A stretch of 64,000 nucleotides of DNA from Macrostomum lignano. Its lineage: Eukaryota. Numbering within the stretch: position 1 is the first letter of the stretch; each line of letters starts with the position of its first letter. Under the pieces are notes generated by a model. That model saw only the letters and a program-made list of their open reading frames with translations, had not been told where the DNA came from and made no database searches. This document shows, in pieces, positions 2,081-61,000 of this stretch. The translations under genes and the position numbers were made by a program. The stretch covers positions 41,767-105,766 of the forward strand of contig NIVC01003297.1 of assembly GCA_002269645.1 (NCBI GenBank), written 5' to 3'.

Positions 2081-3515
2081 TCACATGGGGGCATTTAGCT
2101 GACTACAGGCCTCAAGCAAAGCTTGGTCTGTTCTTGTGCCTACCTTGTGTTTGTCCCAGATTTTGTTGTAAATGGACTGTCAACGGCAGACAGATGTGCG
2201 CTACTGGCGCCAAAGGGCACCCTGTGACACAAGCTACATATCAAGAGCTGCCAAGCTGGCTTCTTTGTGCAAGAGGCATATGAGCAAGTAAAACGAAATG
2301 TCATTTTGTTGGGCTTTGTGGTTCAGCCTTTGGTGCCAACCCTCCAAATCATTGTTTGTTTGTATAGAGTGGCGATAGGCTGAAAGGCAGTTGGAGATAC
2401 AGATAGAAGATGAAATCCATGTGGCCTATAGTATAAGGCATGAGAGAATATGAGAGATGACTCAGCTGATGAGCAGAAATCTGGTTCAGTGAGACTAGCT
2501 GAGTAAATTATAAAAGTACAATAGCTACATGTACCTGAACATACTCCACAAGTGCAGCTAACTGAGGCTCTTCATGCTGGCTGATTTGCACTCAAAGCGT
2601 GTAAAAGGTTCATTTGATGATTTCAGCTGGTAAAAATGGCAAGGCCATTAGCTGGCGACAAACATTTTGCACCCTGTCATTATCAATGTAAGCTCGCTAG
2701 AGGCCAAGCTACTAGACGTGTTGCCACACAGCTTGTGTAAAATGAAAGAGGCAGCCACGCAGCTGGACACCAAGGAAGACGGAATGAATTGCACTCCATG
2801 CTGCTATTTCAAAGTTGAGAAGAAATTCCCCAGGCCTGCAAAATTGGTTCATATGCAAGTGGCAAGATGTTATTTAATTATTTTAATTATTTAATTATTT
2901 TACTTAATTATTCGAAAAACAAAGACTTGCCTTGCATGTGGAATGATTGCACACTGCTTGAAATAGATCTATGTAGTCCCTATGGCTCTTTCCTTCCCAT
3001 CATCAGTGCAAATAGAAGTGGGACCTGCTTCATTGCTCCATTGTTACCAGAAATGAAAGTGTGAATGCTAAATAGTTGCATGAATGGTTGTCAAACAACT
3101 TTGAAGGTCTCTTCGACAAACCACCTAGGAGACTCTGCAAGAAGTGACAACTGTGCTTCTGTGGCTTGACAGCTGCAGCACCCTGTAGCTTGATAGCAAT
3201 ATCTGGTGGCTCAACAGCTATAGCACCCTATAGCTATAGCTTGATAGTGATGTCTAGTGGCTGCTTGACGGCAGCTTGCAGGTTGACTACATACTTAAAC
3301 TGTGGGTCATAGACTTGACAGCGCCAGTTGAAAGATGTCTGCCCTCTTAGATACTGATAATTGCGAGCAGTTATATAATGTTCTCCTTTTAAACAGATGT
3401 GATGCACCCATAGGCAACATATGTCACATTGTAGGCCATGCTGCCTATTCCAAACTGCTTTTTTGCACAAGGGACATACATGTACATGTAGTGTGGCCAT
3501 TTTTGCTTGATGCAT
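2081..3515 (-). pseudogene. Decayed Mutator-like (MULE) transposase with N-terminal PHD finger
   Basis: Manual minus-strand translation gives a PHD finger (CPLCKKAV..GLQCDICCLWVHHICL..WRC), then QLSLLAESPRWFVEETFKVV (degenerate WxxDGTF), QLFSIH..QVPLLFALM, NFEIAAWSAIHSVF..GCLFHFTQAVW..LMALPFLP, TNNDLEGWHQRLN and IWDKH..LLEACSQLNAPM*. All are typical animal MULE motifs. Stops and frameshifts are present. Confidence 0.85.
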
Positions 3516-4387
3516 CCACTGTATAGCTATTTATGGCCACTCTTTATAAGGCCAATTTAGTGGCTGGGGCATACATGTGCAACTGCTGGCCAACCTAGCC
3601 GATCTGGCCACCATAAATTGTGGTGGACCAGGGGTAAATTGCAAAAATGCGCAGCCTAAAGAATACGGACATAAGACTAATTAGATGACGAGGCATTTAG
3701 CCCTTATAAGACAATCATAGTTACTCCTGCCGTTTACCTAAAATTGCATTAGGGTTTCTTTCACAGGTAAGTCGCATTTTTGGTCAAAAAGTAAGTCGCA
3801 TGGCCAGTATAAATCAGGGGGGTTGCACATGTATGGGCTGGGGTCTTAAGGAACCTCTGCCACAGAAATAGAAATAATGTACACACATAGCAGTAGTATC
3901 AATAAATCACTAAATCTAATCCACCACCAGAGGATTCTTGGCTGCGTCTTAGCATATAGCGCACCCAGCATTTCTGGCAATTATTTTACAGTATATACCA
4001 ACTTCACTATACAAGTGCATTGTATAGAATTTTTGGGGTGGATAAATTGATTGCTCATTAGGGCAGAGGGTGTACAATTGTACATTGAGGGACTATTGAA
4101 TTAGATTGTCGCCAAATTTGTTTGTTGCCAAATTGGTGTGCATCCATTAGGATAACTTATACTGAGGATAGGCCTAGCTTATACATATATAGTAAGAGAC
4201 TATTAGTATATAGATAGAGCTATAAATAATCAGATTTATTTAGATAGGAACTAGCAATCTTTGCCCCCCATTAGGGGACATCTGTATAGAATCTTTGTTC
4301 TCTACAAGTAACAAAAAGATAGCCAAATAAAGCCTTCACAAAGAAAACAGACAAAATATTCTAATGAAGTGCAATGCAAAAAGAAAT

Positions 4388-4606
4388 CATCCCAAGACAG
4401 CAAGCATCCCCCAGATAGCAAGCATCCCCCCGATAGCAAGCAACCCCAGATAGCAAGCATCCCCCAGATAGCAAGCATCCCCAAAATAGCAAGCATCGCC
4501 CAGATAGCAAGCATCCCCCAGATAGCAAGCATCCTCCAGATAGCAAGCATCCTCCAGATAGCAAGCATCCTCCAGATAGATAGCATCCCCAAATAGCAAG
4601 CATCCA
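4388..4606. repeat. 18-bp tandem repeat (CAGATAGCAAGCATCCCC)n, ~12 copies
   Basis: Directly visible; it generates the spurious MLAIWG/GCLLSG/DACYLG ORFs. Confidence 0.95.
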
Positions 4607-4704
4607 CCAGACAATAAGTAGCTAGTGCGACAATTGCCTTAGCATTATAATGGCTCCTTAAAAATTTGCTTACTTTTACGTTTGAAACTGTGTATCTTTT
4701 AACA

Positions 4705-5370
4705 ATGTGGCTCTTTAATGTTTTACATGGTGGCTCTTTTATGTTCTACATGGTAACTCTTTTATGTTTTATATGGTGGCTTTTCAATGTCTGACATAGT
4801 GGCTCCTAAATGTTTGACATGATGGCTCTTTTGTTTGACATGGTAGCTCTTTAATATTCTACATGGTGGCTCTTTTATGTTCAACATGGTGGCTCTTCTA
4901 TGTTTGACATGGTGGCTCTTTATTGTTTGACATGGTGGCTCTTTAATATTCAAAATGGTGGCTCTTAAATGTTTAACATAGTGACTTTTTAATGTTTTTC
5001 ATGTTTGCTCTTTAATATTCTACATGGTGGCTCTTTTATGTTCGAAATGGTGGCTCTTTTTTGTTCTACATGGTAACTCTTATGTTTTATACAGTGGCTT
5101 TTTAATGTCTGACATGGAGGCTCTTTTATGTTTGACATGGTGGCTCTTTAATGTTTGACATGGTGGCTCTTTAATGTTCAAAATGGTGGCTCTTTTATGT
5201 TTGACGTGGTGGCTCTTCTATGTTTGACATAGTGGCTCTTTCATCTTTGACATGGAATCACGTATATGTTTGACATGGTGGCTCTTTTATGTTTGACATG
5301 GTAACTCTTTAACGTTCGACATGGTGGCTCTTCTATGTTTGATATTGTGCTTTTTTATGTTTAGCATTTT
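4705..5370. repeat. 23-bp minisatellite (ATGTTTGACATGGTGGCTCTTCT)n
   Basis: Directly visible degenerate tandem array inside the Helitron-B copy. Confidence 0.9.
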
Positions 5371-8977: not shown

Positions 8978-12081
<3,104 letters not shown>

Positions 12082-15000
12082 TCTCTACATATAAAAATCA
12101 AAACTCTGTCTGTCTGTGTGTGTGTCTGTATACAAATTTGATCGTTATGGACTCCCAAACCGCTCAAACAAATGACACCAAACTTTACACCCACCCTAAA
12201 CTTACTACGGAGAATGTCTTAGGCTACCTTTTAATTTCCTAAATTTGAGTCTTCCCACCTAAAAGTGCAAAAAACTGCTCAAAATGCGCAATTTTTTAAC
12301 TAAATCCTCCATAGCGCCGCTCCACTTCTACCGATTCTCTTTAAATTTGACACAGATAATCTTTAACTATTTTGGCACAATCATGTAAAATTTCGAGTCT
12401 CAAAGTTAATCCTGAGCGGTGCTGTGCACTTTTAAAGTTAGGCTGTTTTTTTCAGCGTGGCAACCACCCCAACCTCCGCCCGCCTGCCTCTCTTTCCCGA
12501 TACCGATCTGAGCCCAGATGTGTAAAATGGTTTCAAAATTGACTAGCTTTCAGCTGCCATAAGTTTGCTCCACGTAAAGCGATTGACTTTAAACTTGACA
12601 CAATTCTTCATTGACTCATTCTCTATCTAAATGTAAAGTTTCAACTCTGTAACTCAACCGAAAAAGAAACTGTAAGCATGTGAAGTTTGTCTGCTTTTTC
12701 TGTTGTTTGTGCCACTCACTCACTCATTCCCCCAGAGCGAGACGAAGGGTCAGGCGATAGGACTGAATGTACATAGCAAATGTACAGTGTTTTGGAATAA
12801 CTTTATTTATAGCCTTCTCTGCACCCCGAGAGTGGAGAGGCGTGGAGAGGAGAGAGTTTAGCGAGAGATTCAACCACTGTCCTCACTCCTGTGTATAAGA
12901 CAAGTCTGCAGGAGTTAAACAAGGATGGCAAATCAAGGCGATGTGGGATGGTTTTTAAAAATAGCGAAAAATTAATGATTACAATGAACTGATTACAATG
13001 CAATCCTACTAAATTGCTTACACCATGAAAATTTTAACATTAAGATACGAATAAGGTACTTGAAAATTTAAATAACCTCCTAAGAAATGCGTATTTCCTT
13101 GGTTGTTAGACTGCTGCAGACTGTGGTGGTGGAGCTAGAGAATGGAGATACACAAATTCCTCTCAGGACTGCTAATTGGCCAGAAAGAGCACGAGAAATT
13201 ATAACAACCATGATAGTACTACGTCCCACAAACTGGATTTCGAAGCAGGGATCGGCAGATTTTTATCTCAAAGGCCAGATAAAGAATCAAGCTTATGGCT
13301 GCGGGGCAGATGAGAGTGAAAAGGAAAAGGAGTAGACTATTAGAAAGGGAGGAGGGGCGAGAGGGGATAAGAGAATAGATAGAAGATATCAGGAGAGACG
13401 AGGGGGTCGAGGGCAGCGGCAGAGCAGAGAATATGGGAGTCGGGAGGAAGAAGCGAGAGGAGGGAAGAGAGAAGGGAGATGGAATTAGAGGTGAGAAGAT
13501 GGAGAGAGAAGAGGGGAGAGATGAGACAGAGGATCAATGAGAGAGGAGAGTAGAAAAGAGTGAGAAGAGATGAGAGATGAGAGAACAGAGAGGCAGATGA
13601 GAGAGGATCGAGAGGAGAGATTAGAAAGGATAGAGAAGAGAGGAGATAAGAGGGGGATAGAGGGAGAGAGAGGAGTGAGAAGAGGAGATAAGAGATGAGA
13701 GAGGGAAGAGTGAGAAGATGAGATAAGATATAAGATATAAGAGATAAGAGAGAGAGTTGAGAAAGAAGAGAGGAGAAAGGAGAGATGATAGAGTAAAGGG
13801 AAGAGGAGGAGAGAGGAAAGAGATGAGATCGTGGAGATGAGAGAGATGAAAAAAAGATGATCGAGAGAGTAGAGATGAGAGATGAAGGAAGAGAGAGCAG
13901 AGTGCAGAGAGACGAGAGAAGAGAATAGAGGGGAGAGAGTATAGAAGAAGGAAGAGAAGAGAGGAGTAAGGAAAGAGGAGTGTCAGAAGAGGGGAAAGAG
14001 AAGAGTACACAGTAGAGAGGAGAGTAGAGATGACAGAAGAGAGAGGGGAATGAGAGAGCGAAGATGAGAGTGAACAGACGATATAAGAGAGGAGAGAGGA
14101 GAGTGAGAAAGAAGAGAGAAGACAAGAGAGGGAGAGAGTATAGAAGAGAGAAGTGAAGAGACAAGAAGAAAGAAGAAAGGATCGAGTCCTCCTGAGTCAA
14201 AAAAGGGGAAAGAGAGGAGTACAAGTGGAGAGAGGTGAGAGAACATATGAGAGTAAAGATGACAGAACAGAGAGGGGAGATGAGAGATCAGAACAGACGA
14301 GAGATGGGAGAGTAGAGAGAAAAGAGGAGAGATAAGAAATAAGAGATGAGAGGTGCAGACAAGGGAGAGATGAGAAGTGAGTGAGGAGAGAGGAGGGGAA
14401 GGGAGAGAATCGAGAGGACAGGGGAAATTGGTGAAAAGGACGAGAGAGGAGAGGAAAGAGGGGAGAGATTAGAGAGAAGAGAGATAGGACAGGAGATAGC
14501 AGAGAGATGAGAGGAGAGAGGGGGGAGAGGAGAGAGAAGATAAAAGAAGAAAAATGAGAGATAAGATAGCAAAGACGAGAGAGAAGGGAGAGGTGAGGGA
14601 TAGAAGACATGAGAGGAGAGAGTTGAGAGAAGAGAGGAAAAAGGAGAGAGTAGAGATAAGGAAAAAGTTAAGAGAGGGTATAGTAAGGAGTGAGAAGAGA
14701 GGTGAGGGAAGAGAGAGCAGAGAGCAGAGGGAAACAAGAAGAGATAAAAGAGGAGAAAGGAGATATGAGAGACCAGAGACCAGAGAGAAAAGAGGAGAAG
14801 AGAGAGAAAAGAATAGAGGGGAGATGGAAGAGACGAGAGAAGAGACGAGAGAGGAGAGAGGACAGAGGAGAGAAGAAAGAAGAGATAAGAGGAGAGAGAG
14901 AGAAGAGACAAGAGAGAAGATAGGAAACAGAAAAGAAGATGGAAGTTTCAAAGGATGCAAAGGACATAGGGAGAGGCAGAGGTAGAGGCCAGAGTTTGCC

Positions 15001-19414: not shown

Positions 19415-20283
19415 TCCATATACTAAAAATCTAGTATACTAAACATGAAAAATTTATTAGTTGCTTGCTTGCTTGTATGCAGTCAATTATTTCCCAAATA
19501 GCTCAACCAATTTTTTGCCATTTCTTCACTATAAGATATCAAATATGCCTAAAACAATAATGTTATATCAAATAATACTTAAAATACCACTAATTGACAA
19601 AAATGTTGTCAACTATAGGGTAGAAAGGCTAGACGCAAACTTAAGAGGGCAGAGAGGCAGACTCAAGGTGACAAAAAGGCAGACTCAAGAGGGCAGAGAG
19701 GTGGACTCAAGAGGGCAGAGACAGAGAGACAGACTCAAGGGAGCAAAGAGATAGACAAGGAGGCAAAGAAGCAGACTCAAGGGGGCAGAGAGGGAGACTC
19801 AAGGGGATAAAGAGGCAGATTCAAGGGGGCAGAGAGGCAGACTCAAGGGGGCAGAGAGGCAGACTCAAGAGGGCAGAAAGGTGGACTCAAGAGGGCAGAG
19901 ACAGAAAGACAGACTCAAGGGGGGCAGAGAGATAGACAAGGGGGCAAAGAGGTAGACAAGGGGGCAAAAAAGCAGACTCAAGGGGGCACAGAGGGAGACT
20001 CAAGGGGGCAGAGAGGCAGACTTAAGGGGGCAGAAAGGCAGACTCAAGAGGGCAGAGAGGTAGACTCAAAAGGGCAGAGACAGAGAGACAGACTCAAGGG
20101 GGCAGAGAGGTAGACAAGGGGGCAAAGAAGCAGGCTCAAGGGGGCAGAAAGGGAGACTCAAGGGGATAAAGAGGCAGATTCAAGGGGGCAGAGAGGCAGA
20201 CTCAAGGGGGCAGAGAGGCAGACTCAAGGGGGCAGAGAGGCAGACTCAAGGGGGCAGAGAAGCAGACTCAAGGGGGCAGAGAG
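19415..20283 (+). mobile_element. 5' part of a Helitron-B-like copy with a 22-bp satellite (GACTCAAGGGGGCAGAGAGGCA)n at ~19625-20283
   Basis: A|TCCATATACTAAAAAT..TTGCTTGCTTGCTTGTA matches the family B 5' end (reverse complement of 58030-58080). No 3' end was found. Confidence 0.6.
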
Positions 20284-20737: not shown

Positions 20738-22655
20738 CATTATCATATAGACTATCGTTTTTTAATGCATTTTTTAATGAAGCTGTTAAGTCACAATAAA
20801 TTGCCATAGATTATGAGCGAGAAATTCACTGTTTTTATTAATTTAAGCAACAAGAACTTTAACAGGAAACAGATCGAGGATATAGCAAAGCAAACGAATA
20901 CCAAAGTATTTGATTTTCGACAGTTAAGACTTATAAGTACGAGCTATATATTCTTTGTTAGAAGTTGAACGTGCACCCATCGAAGAGGCAGTTGGCAAAC
21001 ATCGGCTGTTGCACACTTCGCAGGTCAACTTGAGCTTGCTGCATGACTGTTGCACTAGTGGTTGCACTCGTAGTCGCATCGGTTGGTGGGGCCAAATTGT
21101 CACTAACAGCGGTAGCAACCTTCCTGAGGGTTCTGTCACGCTTGCGTGCGCGATAACGTCGAACAGTGGACTCCGATCGTTGTCCCGTTACCGCCATTAT
21201 CTCCCCCATAGGCATTCCTTTGTCGAAAAGATCCGCAATACGCGTGACGCGTATGCAGTGATTCGTGTACTGCTTGGAGAGGTTGCACACACTACTAACG
21301 TGCTTCATGAATGCAGCCAACCAATTGACACCGCGCACTTGCGTAGCAGAGAATCGAATTTGTCCTCCCGAATTGTTAGTCAGAGGGCGCGGAAAGAACG
21401 AGGACGAATTCTGCGGTAACAAACTCTGATAATGCAGGATCAACTCCCGCTGAGCGCCGTAGATCCGACTCTGTTTGCGCTGATTTCCCTTGTATTTTGT
21501 TGGATCGCTAGTCTGGTTTTTTGTCTTTAACGGCGGCAACGCAAGATATGGATTCCCATCAGCGTCGACTTCTTCTTGGAGCGTGCCAACTTGCTTTAGA
21601 CTTGACAGGTGTTCTTGACCTCTCTCGCCCAGGACATACAGCAGCATAAATAGTACTTCATCTTGCAACCGTTCAGCTGTAGAACGGTCAAAATAAGCAT
21701 GCATTTTCTGTAAATCACCTTCTTCTATTGGCTCGTGCTGATTGACAGTGCCTCCATCAGCATGAAAATGCCGCACCTTTACTTGCAGCATCCGGTTGGC
21801 AGTGGCAAACTCGTCACTGGAAATAATATTTGTTCGACGCTTCAGCACGAAAGTCAAGTACCTCTGCACTCCAGCACGAATGCAGACCAACGTAGCTGGC
21901 GAATAGCAACTGCCGTCAGATTTTTTTAGACAGAAGTAAAAGAACCTTAAAAATTCGGCCAAGCGACTGTCACTGATCACGCTCACATCCACAGCACCAT
22001 GCTTCTTCAAAAACTCCACGAACATTTTGCCATACAGAAACATGTGTTCTCGTGTAGTGCTCGGCAGTGATTCCAGTTTGGCAACATCCATTGCACTGGG
22101 TAAATCAGATAGTTCTGGAAGCTCGACACTAGAAACCGCAGCGGCCTCATCAGCCGTCTCGATTTTAGTCAGGTAGTCGATAAAATCTCCAAGAATTTCA
22201 TCGGAACTGTGGTTCACGGCGCTCAGTTCACTCAGAAAATCTAGTTCAGTAGACGAGACGCCATCTAAACTGTCGACCGGTAGGTTTTTCCAGTTGATAA
22301 GAGGCATTTTTAATTCGATTTCTCTCGCTTCTTGCTTTTAGTTCTTAACTTCCTAATTAACAGACTTCATGGTCGAGCTTTTCTTTTAGAGAACTGTATT
22401 CTAAAAAATTGTCTATGCTCCCTTGACCCTGCTCACTGCCGAGCCAATATCTATGGCACGAAGACACTGCAGCGTTACTTAATGGCGTGGCTTAATGGCG
22501 TTACATAATGATCAACCGAAAACGCTAGTCTATATGATAATGCGATTATGTCTATGGTTTCAGAATTAAATAATGATCAGCAGTCACTCGTGGCTTCGCC
22601 ACTCGTGACTGCGATCATTATCCAAGTCTGAAACCTAGACTTAATCTACCATTAT
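20738..22655 (-). mobile_element. Crypton-type tyrosine recombinase DNA transposon, apparently complete (1918 bp)
   Basis: 6-bp direct repeat CATTAT at both ends (20738-20743, 22650-22655). A 24-bp inverted repeat (20738-20761 vs 22519-22542, 1 mismatch) and a 10-bp inverted repeat (20802-20811 vs 22449-22458) flank the YR ORF. A long hairpin occupies 22537-22655. Confidence 0.8.
20958..22307 (-). CDS. Crypton-family (DUF3504-like) tyrosine recombinase, 449 aa, intronless
   Basis: N-terminal LAEFLRFFYFCLKKSDGSCYSPATLVCIRAGVQRYL; catalytic-type motifs GERG, KTKN, YTNHCIRVT, MAVTGQRSESTVRRY; C-terminal FANCLFDGCTFNF tail typical of animal Crypton/KCTD1-like proteins. Confidence 0.92.
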   Translation of the reverse strand: MPLINWKNLPVDSLDGVSSTELDFLSELSAVNHSSDEILGDFIDYLTKIETADEAAAVSSVELPELSDLPSAMDVAKLESLPSTTREHMFLYGKMFVEFLKKHGAVDVSVISDSRLAEFLRFFYFCLKKSDGSCYSPATLVCIRAGVQRYLTFVLKRRTNIISSDEFATANRMLQVKVRHFHADGGTVNQHEPIEEGDLQKMHAYFDRSTAERLQDEVLFMLLYVLGERGQEHLSSLKQVGTLQEEVDADGNPYLALPPLKTKNQTSDPTKYKGNQRKQSRIYGAQRELILHYQSLLPQNSSSFFPRPLTNNSGGQIRFSATQVRGVNWLAAFMKHVSSVCNLSKQYTNHCIRVTRIADLFDKGMPMGEIMAVTGQRSESTVRRYRARKRDRTLRKVATAVSDNLAPPTDATTSATTSATVMQQAQVDLRSVQQPMFANCLFDGCTFNF

Positions 22656-34323: not shown

Positions 34324-36122
34324 ATATGATTGAGCAGTCTGAGTTCTGGTGCGGGATGAACCGTTAAGCTGTTGATTTTGCTGAATATGATTGAGCAGTC
34401 TGAGTTCTAGTGCGGGATGAGCCGCTAAGCTGTTGATTTTGCTGAATATGATTGAGCAGTCTGAGTTCTGGTGCGGGATGAACCGTTAAGCTGTTGATTT
34501 TGCTGAATATGATTGAGCAGTTTGAGTTCTGGTGCGGGATGAGCCGCTAAGCTGTTGATTTTGCTGAATATGATTGAGCAGTTTGAGTTCTGGTGCGGGA
34601 TGAACCGCTAAGCTGTTGATTTGGCTGAATATGATTGAGCAGTTTGAGTTCTGGTGCGGGATGAACCGCTAAGCTGTTGATTTGGCTGAATATGATTGAG
34701 CAGTTTGAGTTCTGGTGCGGGATGAACCGCTAAGCTGTTGATTTGGCTGAATATGATTGAGCAGTCTGAGTTCTGGTGCGGGATGAACCGTTAAGCTGTT
34801 GATTTTGCTGAATATGATTGAGCAGTTTGAGTTCTGGTGCGGGATGAGCCGCTAAGCTGTTGATTTTGCTGAATATGATTGAGCAGTCTGAGTTCTGGTG
34901 GGGGATGAACCGCTAAGCTGTTGATTTGGCTGAATATGATTGAGCAGTTTGAGTTCTGGTGCGGGATGAACCGCTAAGCTGTTGATTTGGCTGAATATGA
35001 TTGAGCAGTTTGAGTTCTGGTGCGGGATGAACCGCTAAGCTGTTGATTTGGCTGAATATGATTGAGCAGTTTGAGTTCTGGTGCGGGATGAGCCGCTAAG
35101 CTGTTGATTTTGCTGAATATGATTGAGCAGTTTGAGTTCTGGTGCGGGATAAGCCGCTAAGCTGTTGATTTTGCTGAATATGATTGAGCAGTCTGAGTTC
35201 TAGTGCGGGATGAACCGCTAAGCTGTTGATTTTGCTGAATATGATTGAGCAGTCTGAGTTCTAGTGTGGGATAAGCCGCTAAGCTGTTGATTTTGCTGAA
35301 TATTATTGAGCAGTCTGAGTTCTAGTGCGGGATGAGCCGCTAAGCTGTTGATTTTGCTGAATATGATTGAGCAGTCTGAGTTATAGTGCGGGATGAGCCG
35401 CTAAGCTGTTGATTTTGCTGAATATGATTGAGCAGTCTGAGTTCTAGTGCGGGATGAGCCGCTAAGCTGTTGATTTTGCTGAATATGGTTGAGCAGTCTG
35501 AGTTCTGGTGCGGGATAAGCCGCTAAGCTGTTGATTTTGCTGAATATGATTGAGCAGTCTGAGTTCTAGTGCGGGATGAGCCGCTAAGCTGTTGATTTTG
35601 CTGAATATGATTGAGCAGTCTGAGTTCTAGTGCGGGATGAGCCGCTAAGCTGTTGAATTTGCTGAATATGATTGAGCAGTCTGAGTTCTAGTGCGGGATG
35701 AGCCGCTAAGCTGTTGAATTTGCTGAATATGATTGAGCAGTCTGAGTTCTAGTGCGGGATGAGCCGCTAAGCTGTTGATTTTGCTGAATATGATTGAGCA
35801 GTCTGAGTTCTGGTGCGGGATAAGCCGCTAAGCTGTTGATTTTGCTGAATATGATTGAGCAGTCTGAGTTCTAGTGCGGGATGAGCCGCTAAGCTGTTGA
35901 TTTTGCTGAATATGATTGAGCAGTCTGAGTTCTGGTGCGGGATAAGCCGCTAAGCTGTTGATTTTGCTGAATATGATTGAGCAGTTTGAGTTCTAGTGCG
36001 GGATGAGCCGCTAAGCTGTTGATTTTGCTGAATATGATTGAGTAGTTTGAGTTCTAGTGCGGGATGAGCCGCTAAGCTGTTGAATTTGCTGAATATGATT
36101 GAGCAGTCTGAGTTCTGGTGGG
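34324..36122. repeat. 61-bp tandem array, ~29.5 copies
   Basis: Unit ATATGATTGAGCAGTCTGAGTTCTRGTGCGGGATGARCCGCTAAGCTGTTGATTTTGCTGA. The register shifts by 1 nt per 60-nt line. Only point variants occur; there are no spacers. Confidence 0.97.
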
Positions 36123-53609: not shown

Positions 53610-54199
53610 CAGCATTATAGCGATTCCTTGCAAGCCTCAACATCGTAGGGATTCCCAAATGAATCTCTTAACTTCGACATGAAGCTTCTTTTATTTTTTA
53701 CATTACGCTTTTTTATCAGCGATCCCTCCCCTGAGGAGGCATCAAATAATGTAATAAAAATTTTTCAATAAACTACATGTAGCTTCTGACTTTAGCCTTG
53801 AAATCTCATTTATACCCCCGTGAGCCTTAACATGTCAGCGATGGCCCCCATAAACCTAGCAATTCCCAAATGAATCTTTTAACTTCGACATGACTTTTCT
53901 TTATGTATACATAGTGCTACTTTTATTTTTTACATGACTTTTCTTCTATCAGCGCCCCCCCGTGACGAGCCAACAAAGAATGCAATAAAAATGGAGTAAA
54001 GTACATGAACTTTGAAGTAGCTTCTGACTTTTGCTTTGACATCTCAGAAACCCCCCCCCCCGTAATCTCAGTTATTCTCTGAGAGCCTTTACGTCTCAGT
54101 TTTTCTCCCCAGCACAGCATTATAGCTGCATTTAATTTTTACATGAACCCTTCATGTCTGACATGACGCTTCTTTTATTCTACCATGATGCTTCTTAAT

Positions 54200-57100
54200 T
54201 TTTTAAATGACACTTTCATTAGTTTTAAATGAGGCTTCTATGATTTTTTCTTGACGCTTCTATGATTTTTACATGACGCTTCTATGATTGTTTACATGAC
54301 GCTTCTACGATTTTTTACATGACGCTTCTATGATTGTTTACATGACGCTTCTATGATTGTTTACATGACGCTTCTATGATTGTTTACATGACGCTTCTAT
54401 GATTTTTTACATGACGCTTCTATGATTGTTTACATGACGCTTCTATGATGTTTTACATGGCGCTTCTATGATTGTTTACATGACGCTTCTATGATTGTTT
54501 ACATGACGCTTCTATGATTGTTTACATGACGCTTCTAAGATTTTTTACATGACGCTTCTATGATTTTTTACATGACGCTTCTATGATTGTTTACATGACG
54601 CTTCTATGATTTTTAAATGACGCTTCTATGATTGTTTACATGACGCTTCTACGATTTTTATATGACGCTTCTATGATTTTTTAAATGACGCTTCTATGAT
54701 TTTTTAAATGACGCATCTATGATTTTTATATGACGCTTCTATGATTTTTTAAATGACGCTTCTATGATTGTTTACATGACGCTTCTATGATTTTTTACAT
54801 GACGCTTCTATGATTTTTTAAATGACGCTTCTATGATTTTTATATGACGCTTCTACGATTTTTTACATGACGCTTCTATGATTGTTTACATGACGCTTCT
54901 ATGATTTTTTAAATGACGCTTCTATGATTGTTTACATGACGCTTCTACGATTTTTATATGACGCTTTTATGATTTTTTAAATGACGCTTCTATGATTTTT
55001 TACAAGACGCTTCTATGATTTTTTACATGACGCTTCTATGATTGTTTACATGACGCTTCTATGATTGTTTACATGACGCTTCTATGATTGTTTACATGAC
55101 GCTTCTATGATTGTTTACATGACGCTTCTACGATTTTTATATGACGCTTCTATGATTTTTTAAATGACGCTTCTATGATTTTTTACAAGACGCTTCTATG
55201 ATTTTTTACATGACGCTTCTATGATTGTTTACATGACGCTTCTATGATTGTTTACATGACGCTTCTATGATTGTTTACATGACGCTTCTATGATTGTTTA
55301 CATGACGCTTCTATGATTTTTTACATGACCTCAACCCACACCTGACCTAAACCTATCTTTAACCCAACCTAAAGCCTTGAAATCTCAGCAATTCTTCTCC
55401 CCTAAGCCTTGGCATTTTAGTGTTTCCTTCTTTAAGAATCACAGCACTATAACGATTTCCACCAAGCTTTGACATCGTAGCAATTCCCAAATGAATCTTT
55501 TAACTTCGACATGACTTTTCTTATATGTATACATAGTGCTACTTTTATTTTTTACATGACTCTGCTTCTATCAGCGCCCCCCCCCCGTGGCGAGCCAACA
55601 AAGAATGTAATAAAAATTGAGTAAAGTACATGAACTTTGAAGTAGCTTCTGACTTTTGCTTTGACATCTCAGAGACCCCCCACCTGTAATCTCAGTTATT
55701 CTCTGTGAGCCTTGACGTCTCAGTAATTCTCCCCAGCACAGCACTGTACTATAGCTTCATTTAACTTTTATATGACACCTTTCATGTCTGACATGACGCT
55801 TCTTTTAATTTTTACATGACGCTTCTTTTATTCTTCCATTATTCTTCTTAATTTATTAAATGACACTTTCATTAGTTTTTAAATGAGGCTTCTATGATTG
55901 TTTGCATGACGCTTCTATGATTTTACCATGACGCTTCTATTATTGTTTGCATGACGCTTCTATGATTTTTACATGACGCTACTATGATTTTTTTATGACG
56001 CTTCTATGATTTTTTACATGACGCTTCTATGATTTTTTACATTACGCTTCCATGATTTTTATATAACGCTTTTATGATTTTTTACATGGCGCTTCTATGA
56101 TTTTTTATGACGCTTTTTTGACTTTTACATGACGCTTCTATGATTTTTTAAATGACGCTTCTATGATTTTTATATAAAGCTTTTACGATTTTTTACATGA
56201 CGCTTCTATGATTGTTTACATGACGCTTCTATGATTTTTTCATGACGCTTCTATGATTGTTTACATGACGCTTCTATGATTTTTACAGGAGGCTTCTATG
56301 ATTTTTTCATGACGCTTCTATGATTTTTTATGACGCTTTTATGACTTTTACATGACGCTTCTATGATTGTTTACATGACGCTTCTATGATTGTTTACATG
56401 ACGCTTCTATCTTTTTTTTAAATGACGCTTCTATGATTTTTATATGACGCTTCTATGATTTTTTACATGACGCTTCTATGATTGTTTACATGACGCTTCA
56501 ATGATTTTTTACATGACGCTTCAATGATTGTTTACATGACGCTTCAATGATTGTTTACATGACGCTTCTACGATTTGTTACATGACGCTTCTATGATTGT
56601 TTACATGACGCTTCTATGATTTTTTACATGACGCTTCTATGATTTTTTACATGACGCTTCTATGATTTTTTACATGACGCTTCTATGATTTTTTACATGA
56701 CGCTTCTATGATTTTTTACATGACGCTTCTATGATTGTTTACATGACGCTTCTATGATTGTGTACATGACGCTTCTTTGATTTTTTACATGACGCTTCTA
56801 TGATTTTTATATGACGCTTCTACGATTTTTTACATGATGCTTCTATGATTGTTTACATGACGCTTCTATGATTGTTTACATGACGCTTCTATGATTGTTT
56901 ACATGACGCTTCTATGATTTTTTACATGACGTTTCTATGATTGTTTACATGACGCTTCAATGATTTTTTACATGACGCTTCAATGATTGTTTACATGACG
57001 CTTCTATGATTGTTTACATGACGCTTCTATGATTGTTTACATGACGTTTCTATGATTTTTTACATGACGCTTTTATGATTTTTTACATGACGCTTTTATG

Positions 57101-57460
57101 ATTTTTTAAATGACGCTTCCATGATTTTTTACATGACGCTTCCATGATTGTTTACATGACGCTTCTATGATTGTTTACATGACGCTTCTATGATTGTTTA
57201 CATGACGCTTTTATGATTGTTTACATGACGCTTCTATGATTGTTTACATGACGTTTCTATGATTTTTTACATGACGCTTTTATGATTTTTTACATGACGC
57301 TTCCATGATTTTTAACATGACGCTTCTATGATTGTTTACATGACGTTTCTATGATTGTTTACATGACGCTTCTATGATTGTTTACATGACGCTTCTATGA
57401 TTGTTTACATGACGCTTCTATGATTGTTTACATGACTCTTCTATGATTGTTTACATGACG
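54200..57460. repeat. 22-23-bp satellite (ATGACGCTTCTATGATTKTTTAC)n in two blocks (~54200-55330, ~55880-57460)
   Basis: Directly visible. Confidence 0.97.
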
Positions 57461-57511
57461 CCTTTTATCCTTTATTTGTCCTTTAATAAAAGCTTTCAAT
57501 AAAAAAACTTT

Positions 57512-57578
57512 TCACTACTATGATTCGAACCCAGGTCACTGCATTAGCAGTCCAGTCTGTTCACATCTAGGCTAGCTC
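57512..57578 (-). other. tRNA-derived segment inside Helitron B
   Basis: Minus strand GAGCTAGCCTAGATGTGAACAGACTGGACTGCTAATGCAGTGACCTGGGTTCGAATCATAGTAGTG followed by a T-run. Confidence 0.55.
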
Positions 57579-58080
57579 GTATCGAATTTTTAAATGAAAT
57601 TGTAGCACTTATATAATTGAACACTCCCTCACAAAGCAGTTATGACATAATAAATTTCCCAGGCAAGTCAGTATCAGTCTCAATTAAAGTTGACAACATG
57701 GTTACGCAATCTAAATCAAGTCTGGTGCTACGCTTCCACACTGCATTTTCAATACTGTGACGCAATTCAAGTCGGAGTTACAATTCAGTTATGATGCAAT
57801 CTATTTCAGAATCAGAATTCAACCAGTCAGTTTTTTCTCTAGCATTCTTACAATGCATTTTAAGTCGAAAAGTTTGCTTGACCTTTGCAAAAAAGCATGT
57901 TTTTCGAATATTTAATCGCTTTAACATGGAGCAATTTCTTAGCCAAGATGCATGTACCGTCACGGGAAAATTTCTGATCGAACAGTGCAAGTCTCATGAA
58001 AATCGGTTAAGCCATTTTTTCTCTAATCGATTACAAGCAAGCAAGCAAGCAAGCAAGATTTTCATTTTTAGTATATAGGA

Positions 58081-61000
58081 CTAGCAATCTACGCCCCCCG
58101 TTGGGGAGCCAAAGAAATGCAATACACGTTTTTTTAATAAGCTACATGTATCCTTGAAATCTTAAAAAATCTCCTGTCAAACCTTGTAAGCCTTGACATG
58201 TCAGTAATTCCCCCCCACAAGCTTTAACATATCAACTTCCCCCTTGACATCTCAGCAATGCCCCAATAAGCCTTGGAAATCTAAAAATATCTGTCAACCT
58301 TCTAACCCTAACCCTAGCCTAACCCTAACCCTAACCCTAACCCTAACCATAACCCTAACCTAACCCTAAAGCATTGAAATTTCAGTAATTCTCTCTAAGA
58401 GTCATAATAGCACTACTACAGGATTATAGCGATTCCCTACAAGCCTCGACATCGTAGGGATTCCCAAATGAATCTCTTAACTTCGACATGAAGCTTTTAT
58501 TTTTTACATTACGCTTTTTTATTATCAGCGATCCCTCCCTGAGGAGCATCAAATAATGTAATAAAAGTTACAATAAGTTTTCAATAAACTACATGTAGCT
58601 TCTGACTTTAGCCTTGAAATCTCATTTATACCCCCGTGAGCCTTGACATCTCAGCTATTCCCCCGTAAGCCTTGACATGTCAGCGATGGCCCCCATAAAC
58701 CTTGAAAACTAAAAAATCCCCTGTTAACCTTGAAACCCGATAAAATATAACCCTCAACCCAAACCTGACCTAAACCTAACTTTAACCCAACCTAAAGCCT
58801 TGAAATCTCAGCAATTCTTCTCCCCTAAGCCTTGACATTTTAGTGATTCCTTCTTTAAGAATCACAGCACTATAACGATTTCCACCAAGCTTTGACATCG
58901 TAGCAATTCCCAAATGAATCTTTTAACTTCGACATGACTTTTTCTTTTATGTATACATAGTGCTACTTTTATTTTTTACATGACTCTTCTTCTATCAGCG
59001 CCCCCCGTGGCGAGCCAACAAAGAATGCAATAAAAAAATTGAGTAAAGTACATGAACTTTGAAGTAGCTTCTGACTTTTGCTTTGACATCTCAGAAACCC
59101 CCCCCGTAAACTCAGTTATTCTCTGAGAGCCTTTACGTCTCATATTCTCTGAGAGCCTTTACGTCTCAGTTTTTCTCCCCAGCACAGCATTATAGCTGCA
59201 TTTAACTTTTACATGACACCCTTCATGTCTGACATGACGCTTCTTTTATTCTACCATGATGCTTCTTAATTTTTTAAATGACACTTTCATTAGTTTATAA
59301 ATGAGGCTTCTATGATTTTTTCTTGACCCTTCTATGATTTTTACATGACGCTTCTATGATTTTTTACATGACGTTCTATGATTTTTTACATGACGCTTCT
59401 ACGATTTTTTACATGACGCTTCTATGATTGTTTACATGACGCTTCTATGATTGTTTACATGACGCTTCTATGATTGTTTACATGACGCTTCTATGATTTT
59501 TTTAAATAACGCTTCTATGATTTTTATATGACGCTTCTACGATTTTTACATGACGCTTCTATGATTGTTTACATGACGCTTCTATGATTTTTTAAATTAC
59601 GCTTCTCTATGATTTTTAAATGACGCTTCTATAATTTTTAATGACGCTTCTATGATTGTTTACATGACGCTTCTGTGATTTTTAAATGACGCTTCTATGA
59701 TTGTTTACATGACGCTTCTATGATTGTTTACATGACGCTTCTATGATTGTTTACATGACGCTTTTATGATTGTTTACATGACGCTTCTATAATTTTTACA
59801 TGACGCTTCTATGATTTTTAAATGACGCTTCTATGATTTTTATATGACGCTTTACGATTTTTTACATGACGCTTCTATGATTGTTTACATGACGCTTCTA
59901 TGATTTTTTACATGACGCTTCTATGATTGTTTACATGACGCTTCTATGATTTTTATATGACGCTTCTATGATTGTTTACATGACGCTTCTATGATTTTTT
60001 ACATGACGCTTCTTTGATTTTTAATGACGCTTCTATGATTTTTAAATGACGCTTCTATGATTTTTACATGACGCTTCTATGATTTTTAAATGACGCTTCT
60101 ATGATTTTTATATGACGCTTCTGATTTTTTACATGACGCTTCTATGATTTTTAAATGATGCTTCTATGATTTTTATATGACGCTTCTACGATTTTTTACA
60201 TGACGCTTCTATGATTGTTTACATGACGCTTCTATGATTGTTTACATGACGCTTCTATGATTTTTTACATGACGCTTCTATGATTGTTTACATGACGCTT
60301 CTATGATTTTTATATGACGCTTCTATGATTTTTTACATGACGCTTCTATGATTTTTACATGACGCTTCTATGATTTTTAATGACGCTTCTATGATTTTTT
60401 ACATGACGCTTCTATGATTGTTTACATGACGCTTTATGATTGTTTACATGACGCTTCTATGATTTTACATGACGCTTCTATGATTTTTTACATGACGCTT
60501 CTATGATTGTTTACATGACGCTTCTATGATTGTTTACATGACGCTTCTATGATTGTTTACATGACGCTTCTATGATTTTTTACATGACGCTTCTATGATT
60601 TTTATATGACGCTTCTACGATTTTTTACATGACGCTTCTATGATTGTTTACATGACGCTTCTATGATTGTTTACATGACGCTTCTATGATTGTTTACATG
60701 ACGCTTCTATGATTTTTTAATGACGCTTCTATGATTGTTTACATGACGCTTCTATGATTTTTACATGACGCTTCTATGATTGTTTACATGACGCTTCTAT
60801 GATTTTTACATGACGCTTCTATGATTGTTTACATGACGCTTCTATGATTGTTTACATGACGCTTCTATGATTGTTTACATGACGCTTTTATGATTGTTCA
60901 CATGACGCTTCTATGATTTTTTACATGACGCTTCTATGATTTTTAATGACGCTTCTATGATTTTTATATGACGCTTCTATGATTTTTACATGACGCTTCT

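What the first reader, a model, noticed from the sequence alone, without database searches (positions are those of the whole stretch)
20738..22655. Crypton element carries an internal reverse-complement copy of its own circle junction (DIRS-ICR-like); candidate folded-ssDNA recombination system
Seen: the element is bounded by CATTAT direct repeats. Joining the ends gives CTGAAACCTAGACTTAATCTAC-CATTAT-CATATAGACTATCGTTTT. The reverse complement of internal 22519-22563 is CTGAAACCATAGACATAATCG-CATTAT-CATATAGACTAGCGTTTT, nearly the same sequence. The left half of the internal site pairs with the left terminus (23/24 bp). The right half pairs with the right terminus through a ~119-nt hairpin (22537-22655). 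Established: DIRS YR-retrotransposons use an internal complementary region matching both termini, and CTX phage and integron attC sites are recombined by tyrosine recombinases as folded single-stranded DNA. Cryptons are usually described only as having short terminal direct repeats, and their mechanism is not well resolved. Inference: an excised single-stranded circle would fold so that the junction and the internal site form a duplex att site with a CATTAT core for integration. An alternative is an inversion site. I do not know whether this has been described for Cryptons.
Basis: partly seen in the sequence, partly recalled or inferred. Interest (0 to 1): 0.9.

Follow-up and report, generated by a model that had tools for sequence, protein, structure and literature searches.

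The report
Crypton transposon with conserved terminal DNA hairpin
This flatworm jumping gene, and at least a dozen related families in other animals, carries a conserved end hairpin that also matches its opposite end, which suggests that these poorly understood elements move as folded single-stranded DNA.

Summary
Window 20738-22655 is an intact 1,918-bp CryptonA-type tyrosine-recombinase (YR) transposon of Macrostomum lignano. A second copy (98.5% identical) loses homology exactly at the two ends. The minimal shared core is ATTA/TAAT.

Site 22519-22563 is the reverse complement of the circle junction. With the right terminus it forms a 119-nt hairpin (z = -9.9).

I found the same layout in about 14 further families (26-45% YR identity). 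They come from a scallop, a snail, marine metagenomes and a locus fetched afterwards as a prediction test. Each has a 90-170-nt terminal palindrome. The inner arm runs through an inverted core into 8-25 nt complementary to the opposite terminus. This beat 500/500 control probes in 10 of 12 loci tested.

The hairpin carries conserved non-Watson-Crick features on one strand only:
- G(N)NA apical loops in 13 of 17 hairpins;
- tandem GA/GA internal loops in 15 of 20, with none on the other strand;
- an apparent 2-3-nt bulge next to the core.

These features follow the module even where gene orientation is flipped. That favours a folded-DNA recombination site and argues against an inversion switch.

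The single-stranded-circle mechanism remains an inference. I found no description of this layout in the Crypton literature I could search.

The parts
20738..22655 (-). Whole CryptonA-type element, 1,918 bp including both core copies. The strand given is that of the YR gene, which is also the strand on which the hairpin lies at the 5' end.
   Evidence: Homology with the second copy L001 runs from 20739 to 22654 and stops there.
20738..20743 (+). Left copy of the core CATTAT (terminal direct repeat). The minimal shared core is ATTA.
   Evidence: The L001 left junction reads ..TAA-ATTAT-CATATAG.
20744..20761 (+). Left terminal arm, CATATAGACTATCGTTTT. It is complementary to 22519-22536.
   Evidence: pair I1; unique in the window; 0 expected by chance.
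20958..22307 (-). Tyrosine recombinase ORF, 449 aa, intact. The catalytic residues R229, K263, H350, R353 and Y385 are conserved. Q376 stands where relatives have His.
   Evidence: P0001 is 98% identical. Relatives match DUF3504 in 13 of 18 and QRICH1 in 15 of 18.
22472..22510 (+). Three tandem 13-nt repeats (GCGTTACTTAATG-like) between the internal site and the gene start. On the gene strand each begins CATTA, which resembles the core. Possibly promoter or accessory binding sites.
   Evidence: family D1. The function is inferred.
22519..22536 (+). Distal half of the internal junction copy (J'). It is complementary to the left terminal arm.
22537..22542 (+). Internal inverted core, ATAATG.
   Evidence: It pairs with 22650-22655 in the fold.
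22543..22594 (+). Inner arm of the terminal hairpin. It includes a second core copy at 22571-22576 and the TC at 22588-22589, which is GA on the minus strand.
   Evidence: (pairs I2, I7).
22595..22597 (-). Apical loop, GAA on the minus strand and set in GCGAAGC. It reads TTC on the plus strand.
22598..22649 (+). Outer (terminal) arm of the hairpin. It includes TC at 22603-22604 (GA on the minus strand) and a second core copy at 22616-22621. TAC at 22647-22649 opposes the single C at 22543, giving a net 2-nt bulge next to the core.
22650..22655 (+). Right copy of the core CATTAT (terminal direct repeat).
   Evidence: The L001 right junction reads ..CTAC-CATTA-ACTT.

Best explanation
The element is an intact CryptonA-lineage DNA transposon. 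Its cis-acting transposition module is a terminal, imperfect 119-nt hairpin-palindrome. The outer arm of the hairpin ends in the terminal core. The inner arm continues through an inverted core into 18 nt complementary to the opposite terminus. Together these make an inverted internal copy (J') of the circle junction (J).

Most likely this module is the element's recombination site in folded form, as a hairpin or cruciform on the strand that carries the hairpin at its 5' end (the window minus strand).
- In a circularised copy, J pairs with J'. This gives a duplex att site with the (C)ATTA(T) crossover core, a 2-nt bulge beside it and a structured stem above it. The YR recombines this site with a short ATTA-like target.
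- In the integrated state, J' can base-pair with both termini of the same strand and hold them together, which would allow strand-specific excision or copy-out.

Shown: the anatomy, the boundaries, conservation across about 15 families, compensatory change, strand-specific non-Watson-Crick features, and constant orientation of those features.

Inferred: that folding happens in vivo, that the YR acts on the folded form, that the intermediate is single-stranded, and the order of the steps.
For: Anatomy and boundaries.

The same layout occurs in independent families.
- Tara family L004-L009: 1,889-bp copies, 100% identical, with 4-5 different flanks. Core TAAT; J' matches the 3' terminus 15/15.
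- JGI metagenome loci L010-L024.
- Argopecten L035, an outer and a nested inner element with 17/17 and 15/16 matches, and Gigantopelta L036.
- L037 was fetched after the hypothesis was formed and met every prediction: hairpin 519-635, GTA loop, GA/GA loop, J' 16/16 to 2496-2511.

The complement of the sequence just inside the inner arm beats 500/500 control probes in 10 loci and 492/500 in one. One locus was untestable.

RNAalifold on 12 hairpins finds compensatory changes at 30 of 34 pairs.

Strand-specific features: apical loops are GAA, GTA, GCA, GTTA or GTCA in 13 of 17 hairpins. Of 20 two-by-two internal loops, 15 are GA/GA and 0 are TC/TC, on the strand defined independently by the position of J'.

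In the Argopecten inner element the gene is flipped relative to the module, yet the GAA loop and GA/GA stay on the 5'-hairpin strand. This ties the asymmetry to the transposition module and not to transcription.

A 2-3-nt excess in the terminal arm next to the core is proven in the two families with several flanks (window/L001 and L004). It is apparent in most of the others.

Context from papers:
- Bacterial YR elements (SEs) make a circle from one strand only (PMC9345347).
- Strand choice at attC is set by extrahelical bases and an unpaired spacer in a folded strand (PMC2727003).
Against: - There is no direct evidence for any circle, single-stranded or double-stranded.
- The element encodes no Rep or helicase that would make ssDNA.
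- Complementarity and covariation are also expected for two duplex copies of one protein-binding site.
- Nearest-neighbour DNA energies favour the proposed strand only slightly, by 0 to -7 kcal/mol. It is more stable in 12 of 17 hairpins, about equal in 4 and worse in 1.
- G.T versus A.C mismatch counts give no clear strand signal (10 vs 5; most mismatches are transversions).
- The families share ancestry, so the counts are not independent events.
- In single-copy metagenome loci the exact core and the bulge depend on how the ends are read.
- In L036, L030 and L025 the partner terminus was not found, untestable or weak.
Confidence: 0.55

Rival explanations
1. Classical duplex model. The Crypton moves as a double-stranded circle. 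J is the only crossover site, and J' plus the palindrome are duplex accessory sites. For example, a second YR dimer could bind there to assemble or regulate the synapse. The conserved GA/TC dinucleotides and the 2-nt offset would then make the two arms distinguishable in duplex DNA, so that only J is cut. This recalls the GA/GAA bubble that makes one arm of the parvovirus MVM left-end junction an active origin (recalled from memory, not tested here).
For: - The arms contain repeated family-specific motifs that look like protein-binding sites, and these recur near the 3' end. Examples are CCGGGCA in L013 and CCGTGCA in L019. Further core copies lie in stem II (window 22571-22576 and 22616-22621).
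- The ends are always at J and never at J'.
- The standard Crypton model is a duplex circle (PMC3212892).
Against: - It does not explain why the whole spacer is palindromic up to a 3-4-nt tip.
- It does not explain why the tip is a G(N)NA loop on a GC clamp on one strand.
- It does not explain why the asymmetric dinucleotides are specifically GA opposite GA, which form stable sheared pairs only when that strand folds.
- It gives no role to the complementarity between J' and the far terminus.
Confidence: 0.28
2. The hairpin is a replication or priming structure. Candidates are a self-priming 3' hairpin on the window plus strand, an origin for second-strand synthesis of a single-stranded intermediate, or a hairpin telomere of a linear form produced when the YR resolves a cruciform.
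For: - On the window plus strand the element ends in a hairpin whose 3' end (CATTAT) is base-paired.
- GNA-loop mini-hairpins and imperfect terminal palindromes are typical of ssDNA replicons (my own knowledge, not tested).
Against: - The element encodes no polymerase, Rep or primase.
- The ends of integrated copies lie precisely at a short core shared with the target. That indicates site-specific recombination, not end-joining of a linear form.
- The duplex palindrome is imperfect, so it is not a replicated hairpin telomere.
Confidence: 0.07
3. Inversion switch. J and J' are inverted YR sites, and recombination between them flips the intervening segment, as with FLP in the yeast 2-micron plasmid.
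For: There are two inverted copies of a core-containing site, and both segments between the cores have inverted-repeat ends.
Against: - The asymmetric marks (GNA loop, GA/GA) have the same orientation relative to the termini in all 17 hairpins and in all copies of multi-copy families.
- The flipped segment is itself a 107-bp palindrome with no coding content.
- The two sites differ by a 2-3-nt offset at the core.
Confidence: 0.03
4. The palindrome is a transcriptional or RNA element (promoter, operator or 5'-UTR hairpin) of the YR gene and plays no part in recombination.
For: In most families it lies 200-350 bp upstream of the gene.
Against: - It starts at the very first nucleotides of the element and contains the crossover core.
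- In the Argopecten inner element and in L025 it lies downstream of the gene.
- There is no Rfam match.
Confidence: 0.04
5. Chance, an assembly artefact, or a one-off nested insertion of a terminal fragment.
For: None beyond the a priori possibility.
Against: - Shuffle controls exclude chance.
- The feature is identical in a second genomic copy.
- It is present in about 15 families from independent assemblies.
Confidence: 0.01

Closest known systems
Crypton DNA transposons, CryptonA lineage (Goodwin et al. 2003; Kojima & Jurka 2011, PMC3212892)
   Same: A single YR gene, no other enzyme, and short (4-6 bp) terminal direct repeats that match the target without a target-site duplication. Relatives carry DUF3504/QRICH1-type YR domains. 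The host is an animal.
   Different: Published descriptions give no internal structure:
[quoted passage not shown] - Repeats are variable or undetectable in fungal CryptonA (PMC13465315).
Here there is a conserved terminal hairpin plus an inverted copy of the junction.
DIRS1-type YR retrotransposons with an internal complementary region (ICR)
   Same: An internal segment has two halves complementary to the two extreme termini. It lies next to one end of the element (definition in PMC8969392).
   Different: This element has no reverse transcriptase, RNase H or methyltransferase, and no long inverted terminal repeats. The ICR of DIRS is explained by cDNA synthesis, which does not apply to a DNA-only element. 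In L003 the YR gene keeps an intron, which fits movement as DNA.
Folded single-stranded YR substrates: integron attC (IntI) and CTX-phage attP(+) (XerCD)
   Same: An imperfect hairpin contains the crossover site. Extrahelical or unpaired positions are conserved and one strand is marked (PMC2727003). The integrated layout core-arm-loop-arm'-core'-...-core is what is expected after one arm of a folded att site is cut (topology derived here; CTX recalled from memory).
   Different: The host is eukaryotic. The YR is only distantly related: the best solved relative is XerA at E = 8e-5 over the catalytic C-terminus, and IntI4 scores E = 0.2. The stem is far longer (45-80 bp). No ssDNA source such as conjugation or a phage is known. 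Nothing has been shown experimentally.
Strand-biased circularizing integrative elements (SEs) of Vibrio (Nonaka et al. 2022, PMC9345347)
   Same: YR-encoding elements that make a circle from one specific strand without emptying the donor site. This is a precedent for strand-specific attL x attR exchange and copy-out.
   Different: SEs carry two YRs plus two other genes and have 19-bp imperfect terminal inverted repeats. No hairpin or junction copy is reported for them.
Terminal hairpins of parvoviruses and stable GNA-loop DNA mini-hairpins such as d(GCGAAGC)
   Same: Imperfect terminal palindromes with conserved GA-type bubbles. The window's apical sequence on the minus strand is exactly GCGAAGC.
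   Different: Those systems use HUH Rep nickases and rolling-hairpin replication, and no such gene is present here. This comparison rests on my own knowledge and was not tested.

Membership tests
Crypton (CryptonA) DNA transposon | Encodes a tyrosine recombinase with the catalytic R..K..HxxR..(H/W)..Y residues as its only enzyme | tested here: met
   The 449-aa ORF is the only long ORF. R229, K263, H350, R353 and Y385 are invariant in an 18-sequence alignment. Q376 replaces the usual His in the M. lignano clade. The Pfam Phage_integrase hit is weak (E = 0.0023).
Crypton (CryptonA) DNA transposon | Short (4-6 bp) terminal direct repeats shared with the target; no target-site duplication and no long TIRs or LTRs | tested here: met
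   CATTAT lies at both ends of the window copy and ATTA at both ends of L001. TAAT bounds the L004 family with 4-5 different flanks.
Crypton (CryptonA) DNA transposon | The YR belongs to the DUF3504/QRICH1-related animal lineage | tested here: met
   DUF3504 is hit by 13 of 18 aligned relatives (best E = 4.4e-16) and QRICH1 by 15 of 18. The window protein itself has only a weak QRICH1 hit (E = 0.0087). NCBI names relatives 'KIAA1958-like'.
Crypton (CryptonA) DNA transposon | Excision as an extrachromosomal circle and reintegration by site-specific recombination | not testable with these tools
   No read data or experiments were available here.
DIRS1-type YR retrotransposon | Reverse transcriptase/RNase H (and methyltransferase) genes | tested here: not met
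   The 1.9-kb element holds only the YR ORF.
DIRS1-type YR retrotransposon | Long inverted terminal repeats | tested here: not met
   The two termini are not inverted repeats of each other. Each pairs only with the internal site.
DIRS1-type YR retrotransposon | Internal complementary region matching both extreme termini | tested here: met
   22519-22563 is the reverse complement of right end + core + left end. The same holds in about 14 other families.
Folded-ssDNA YR recombination sites (attC / CTX attP(+) type) | The crossover site lies in an imperfect hairpin formed by one strand | tested here: met
   This is an in-silico result only. The core pairs with the inverted core at the base of a 119-nt hairpin, z = -9.9. 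Seventeen hairpins were folded.
Folded-ssDNA YR recombination sites (attC / CTX attP(+) type) | Conserved extrahelical or unpaired positions that mark one strand | tested here: met
   GA/GA in 15 of 20 two-by-two loops against 0 TC/TC. G(N)NA loops in 13 of 17 hairpins. A 2-3-nt bulge lies beside the core. Whether these positions direct strand choice is unknown.
Folded-ssDNA YR recombination sites (attC / CTX attP(+) type) | Only one strand is recombined; a single-stranded intermediate exists; the junction is resolved by replication | not testable with these tools
   This needs strand-specific assays.
Invertible-segment / 2-micron-type YR system | Both orientations of the segment between the inverted sites occur among copies | tested here: not met
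   The orientation of the asymmetric marks is constant in all copies and families.
[quoted passage not shown] | A four-gene core with two YRs (intA, intB) and 19-bp imperfect terminal inverted repeats C/C' | tested here: not met
   The element has a single YR gene and no terminal inverted repeats between the two ends. The SE features are taken from PMC9345347.

The most novel reading that the evidence does not exclude
CryptonA elements would be the first eukaryotic tyrosine-recombinase transposons that recombine as folded single-stranded DNA. One specific strand would be copied or peeled out, with the internal junction copy holding both ends together. It would then fold into a hairpin att site and be inserted by a single strand exchange that replication completes. 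This would explain why active Cryptons both excise and gain copies. It would also suggest that the ICR of DIRS retrotransposons descends from, or converged on, a recombination-site architecture already present in DNA Cryptons.
Probability: 0.33. Interest if true: 0.92.

Novelty: new variant of a known kind. Interest (0 to 1): 0.8.

Why it matters
Cryptons are among the least understood orders of eukaryotic transposons. Their boundaries are hard to find, no cis-acting structure has been described for the animal lineage, and their mechanism is only a model by analogy. The first direct observations of activity did not fit simple cut-and-paste.

A conserved terminal hairpin with an internal junction copy would help in three ways:
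- It gives annotators a structural signature for finding complete CryptonA elements and their non-autonomous derivatives.
- It gives experimenters a defined, small (about 150-nt) substrate for testing the recombinase in vitro, folded versus duplex.
- It links DNA Cryptons, the ICR of DIRS retrotransposons and bacterial folded-ssDNA recombination systems. That link bears on the origin of YR retrotransposons and on the DNA-binding ancestry of the domesticated DUF3504 genes (ZMYM2-4, QRICH1, KCTD1, KIAA1958).

Tried and rejected
- **Other copies in the window.** tblastn and blastn of the element against the window find none.
- **Look-ups that failed.** Exact-protein look-ups of the window protein and of P0004 returned nothing.
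- **Contigs too short.** The closest other families, L002, L003 and L011, sit on 1.8-kb contigs that start just inside the internal site. The module could not be examined there.
- **Collection scans.** The 18-sequence alignment was too diverse for the first scan attempt. The IMG/VR scan found no relative.
- **G.T versus A.C mismatch bias as a strand test.** Inconclusive, 10 vs 5, with 61 other mismatches.
- **Strand difference in nearest-neighbour DNA folding energy.** Small and not decisive.
- **Splint test without the core.** The first version of the test excluded the core and was underpowered. I replaced it with a version that includes the core and restricts the search window.
- **Partner terminus.** Not found in L036, untestable in L030 and weak in L025.
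- **Rfam.** No match anywhere in the window.
- **Covariation alone.** I do not treat it as evidence for folding, because inverted duplex sites would give the same pattern.
- **Empty allele.** The predicted AACTTGT-CATTAT-TGTTCTC could not be searched, because no tool here scans eukaryotic genome DNA.
- **Protein structure prediction.** Not run. The generic YR fold would not separate the models.
Full report
**What the window is.** The 449-aa ORF at 20958-22307 (minus strand) is 98% identical to a Macrostomum lignano protein (P0001, BOX15_Mlig009749g2). That protein is encoded on contig NIVC01002014.1 of assembly GCA_002269645.1. The window is therefore flatworm DNA. It is repeat-rich and has no Rfam match.

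**Checking the observation.**
- CATTAT lies at 20738-20743 and at 22650-22655.
- The left terminus 20738-20761 is complementary to 22519-22542 (24 nt, 96%). This 24-mer occurs nowhere else in the window, and shuffles give 0 matches.
- From 22537 to 22655 the sequence folds into a 119-nt hairpin. The two cores pair at its base. MFE is -37.6 kcal/mol, z = -9.9, and 0 of 200 shuffles fold as well.

The boundaries are right. The second genomic copy, L001, is 98.5% identical from 20739 to 22654, and similarity ends abruptly on both sides. In L001 the ends read ..TAA-ATTAT-CATATAG and ..CTAC-CATTA-ACTT. Only ATTA is common to element and target there, so the crossover core is (C)ATTA(T). L001 also shows that the window copy has lost one A from its right arm (CTGAAACC[A]TAGAC).

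**What the element is.** It has one ORF, a tyrosine recombinase. R229, K263, H350, R353 and Y385 are invariant across 18 relatives, and Q376 stands at the usual His position in the M. lignano clade. The Pfam hits of the window protein are weak (Phage_integrase and QRICH1). Of the 18 aligned relatives, 13 hit DUF3504 and 15 hit QRICH1. DUF3504 is the Pfam name for the CryptonA-type YR (PMC3212892; PMC13465315). A full HMMER scan found 2,350 cluster representatives at E <= 0.001, so the lineage is large. The best solved relatives are XerA and the Tn1549 integrase, matched only over the catalytic C-terminus, and QRICH1. The element meets the tested defining features of a Crypton. It lacks the reverse transcriptase and the long inverted terminal repeats of DIRS elements.

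**Is the layout a peculiarity of one family?** No. I fetched DNA around distant relatives (26-45% YR identity) and analysed each locus on the strand where the palindrome lies at the 5' end of the element.

*Tara/ENA family (L004-L009).* A 1,889-bp segment is 100% identical in six contigs with four to five different flanks on each side.
- The element starts TAAT-ATAACAATATTG and ends AAAATCCTGAA-TAAT.
- Its first 120 nt form a palindrome.
- The sequence just inside the inner arm reads ..CAATATTGAT-ATTA-TTCAGGATTTT.
- That is the reverse complement of the junction AAAATCCTGAA-TAAT-AT(AA)CAATATTG.
- None of this sequence resembles the flatworm element, but the layout is identical.

*JGI metagenome scan.* The scan gave 23 loci. 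Those with enough upstream DNA carry a 90-120-nt palindrome 200-350 bp upstream of the YR gene. In each, the 8-25 nt inward of the inner arm are complementary to a site 1.79-2.0 kb downstream.

*Control test.* I compared the real probe with 500 probes taken from elsewhere in the same locus. The real probe won 500/500 in ten loci (window, L004, L012, L013, L015, L016, L017, L019, L022, L024) and 492/500 in L010. L030 is too short to test.

*Molluscs.* A scallop chromosome (Argopecten, L035) holds two nested elements.
- The outer element has a 171-nt hairpin, and its J' matches 5348-5364 at 17/17.
- The inner element has a 143-nt hairpin, and its J' matches 2678-2693 at 15/16.

A snail locus (Gigantopelta, L036) has a 168-nt hairpin, but I could not find its partner terminus.

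*Prediction test.* L037 is a eukaryotic contaminant contig in a bacterial MAG, retrieved after the hypothesis was written down. It met every prediction: palindrome 519-635 about 230 bp upstream of the gene, J' 16/16 complementary to 2496-2511, and core ACAATG at both ends.

On the 5'-hairpin strand the cores read ATAATG (flatworm), ACAATG (L017, L037), TAAT (L004) and (C)AAT(A) in most of the others.

**Evidence on how it works.** RNAalifold on 12 hairpins finds 34 pairs, 30 of which show compensatory double changes. This shows selection for complementarity. Two duplex copies of one binding site would give the same result, so I do not count it as evidence for folding. Three other observations are more telling.

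First, the palindrome is continuous up to a 3-4-nt tip. It is not just two sites separated by an arbitrary spacer.

Second, the departures from perfect pairing are conserved and confined to one strand.
- On the 5'-hairpin strand the apical loop is GAA, GTA, GCA, GTTA or GTCA in 13 of 17 hairpins. It always sits on a GC-rich 5-7-bp clamp.
- In the window the tip is GCGAAGC on the minus strand.
- Of 20 two-by-two internal loops, 15 are 5'-GA/5'-GA and none is TC/TC.
- One GA/GA loop lies directly under the GC clamp. Another lies 22-27 nt from the core.
- In duplex DNA these are GA/TC dinucleotides in direct orientation inside an inverted repeat. When that strand folds they become tandem G.A pairs and G...A-closed loops.
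- From my own knowledge, tandem G.A pairs and G...A-closed loops are known stabilisers of DNA hairpins. This was not tested here.
- The surrounding stems have turned over many times, so persistence of these four-nucleotide motifs needs selection.

Third, the terminal arm carries 2-3 extra nucleotides right next to the core compared with the inner arm.
- In the window, TAC at 22647-22649 opposes the single C at 22543.
- In L004 the extra nucleotides are AA, in L017b GAA, and in L037 and L017a TTT.
- The offset is proven where several flanks fix the core (flatworm, L004).
- It is the more economical reading in the single-copy loci, where it makes the core AAT throughout.

Two further points bear on the alternatives.
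- In the Argopecten inner element and in L025 the gene points the other way relative to the module. In the Argopecten element the GAA loop and GA/GA still sit on the 5'-hairpin strand. The asymmetry therefore belongs to the transposition module and not to transcription.
- No hairpin has the marks in the opposite orientation. Opposite marks would be expected if J' were used for integration or if the segment between the cores flipped.

**Proposed mechanism.**

*Shown.* The element ends at a short core shared with its target. Its circle junction J has an inverted internal twin J'. J and J' are the distal parts of one long imperfect palindrome with strand-specific marks.

*Inferred, circular copy.* On the marked strand J pairs with J'. 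This forms a hairpin att site with the core in the stem, a bulge beside it and 18 bp of extra stem contributed by the opposite terminus. The YR recombines this folded site with an ATTA-like duplex target.

The layout of integrated copies is core-arm-loop-arm'-core'-...-core. That is exactly what results when one arm of such a folded site is opened and joined to the target.

*Inferred, integrated copy.* J' can pair with both termini of the same strand and bring them together, which would allow strand-specific excision or copy-out.

*Fit with published work.*
- The only direct observations of Crypton activity (CryptonF in Chlamydomonas) found clean excisions yet a net gain in copies.
- Bacterial YR elements are known that circularise only one strand.
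- Integron attC sites show that extrahelical bases and an unpaired spacer set strand choice in a folded substrate.

I give about 0.55 to 'the folded form is the functional recombination site' and about 0.33 to the full single-stranded-circle scheme.

*Main rival (about 0.28).* A classical duplex circle in which J' and the palindrome are accessory protein-binding sites, and the GA/TC marks merely make the arms distinguishable. Repeated family-specific motifs in the arms and near the 3' end show that proteins do read these sequences, and this fits either model.

*Minor rivals.* A priming or telomere role, an inversion switch, a transcriptional role and chance are all less likely. The reasons are given in the rival explanations.

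**Comparison with what is known.** The element is a member of the Crypton order, CryptonA lineage. In topology it resembles the ICR of DIRS1-type retrotransposons (definition in PMC8969392), but it is not a DIRS. In proposed function it resembles attC and CTX attP(+), but its recombinase is only distantly related to IntI and Xer.

The literature I could search does not describe this structure in Cryptons.
- Kojima and Jurka found no terminal repeats in animal Cryptons.
- A 2022 curation guide lists only the short direct repeat.
- A 2026 study of fungal CryptonA applied many repeat finders, including inverted-repeat tools, and reported no consistent repeats.
- Searches combining Crypton with ICR, hairpin, palindrome, stem-loop or single-stranded DNA returned nothing relevant.

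Repbase notes and subscription journals were not searchable, so prior description cannot be excluded.

**Verdict.** Novelty: a new variant of a known kind. Interest: 0.8.

Noticed in passing
window 22472-22510: Three tandem 13-nt repeats (GCGTTACTTAATG / GCGTGGCTTAATG / GCGTTACATAATG) lie between the internal site and the YR start codon. On the gene strand each begins CATTA, which resembles the crossover core. They may be accessory YR sites or promoter elements.
   Followed up: no
window 22505-22510, 22571-22576, 22616-22621: Extra copies of the core hexamer (ATAATG/CATTAT) occur beyond the three that define the ends and J'. Two of them sit symmetrically in the middle stem of the hairpin, within ATAATGATC / GATCATTAT. 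A similar xAATGAT motif is in the middle stem of L017, L012 and L022.
   Followed up: partly
window 20803-20815, 22411-22421, 22450-22460, and in both arms: A CCATAGA(C/T)-like motif recurs at least seven times in the element's non-coding ends, on both strands. This suggests repeated protein-binding sites.
   Followed up: no
L012:1842-1877, L013:1662-1699, L019:1832-1871, L020:1658-1692, L023:1637-1676; L037:2407-2433: A second, small (35-40 nt) palindrome or arm-motif copy lies about 100 nt from the 3' terminus. It carries the same family-specific motif as the 5' hairpin (CCGGGCA in L013, CCGTGCA in L019). The motif co-varies between the two ends of an element.
   Followed up: partly
L001:4845-4890, aligned to window 22418/22419: The second M. 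lignano copy has a 48-bp GC-rich, partly palindromic insertion (..GGGGGCTCTGCCCCCACACCCCC..) in the region upstream of the gene. The window copy lacks it.
   Followed up: no
L017:43-2148 and 2149-3938: Two related Cryptons of different families lie head to tail, each with its own hairpin. The sequence before each 5' core resembles a 3' terminus, which suggests that elements insert into or next to each other's ends.
   Followed up: partly
L035:293-5364 with an inner element at about 2678-4950 (Argopecten irradians, CM084273.1): A Crypton is nested inside a larger Crypton-like element, which also holds a YR fragment on the opposite strand. In the inner element the YR gene is flipped relative to the hairpin module.
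   Followed up: partly
L003:1413-1502: The YR gene of this relative (49% identity) appears to contain a short spliceosomal intron (gtatgt...tttgcag) near its C-terminus. The downstream exon restores the conserved ...F.NC.F.F C-terminal motif.
   Followed up: no
window protein residue 376 (alignment A3): The M. lignano clade (window, P0002, P0003, P0005) has Gln where the other relatives have the conserved His of the TGHK motif in the YR active site.
   Followed up: no
window 54161-64000, 34324-36120, 10402-14936, 19631-20283: The surroundings are dominated by satellites. There is a 23-bp unit over about 10 kb at the window's end, a 61-bp unit x 29.5 at 96% identity, long GA-rich microsatellite tracts with extreme GC/AT skew, and a 22-bp array ending about 450 bp from the element's left end.
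   Followed up: no
L002, L003, L011 and the Logan contigs of P0010, P0013, P0018, P0026 (1.7-1.8 kb): Many k-mer-assembled contigs of relatives are 1.7-1.8 kb long. L002 starts immediately inside the position of the internal site, as if the inverted junction copy or the hairpin regularly breaks the assembly. This could explain why the module has been overlooked.
   Followed up: no
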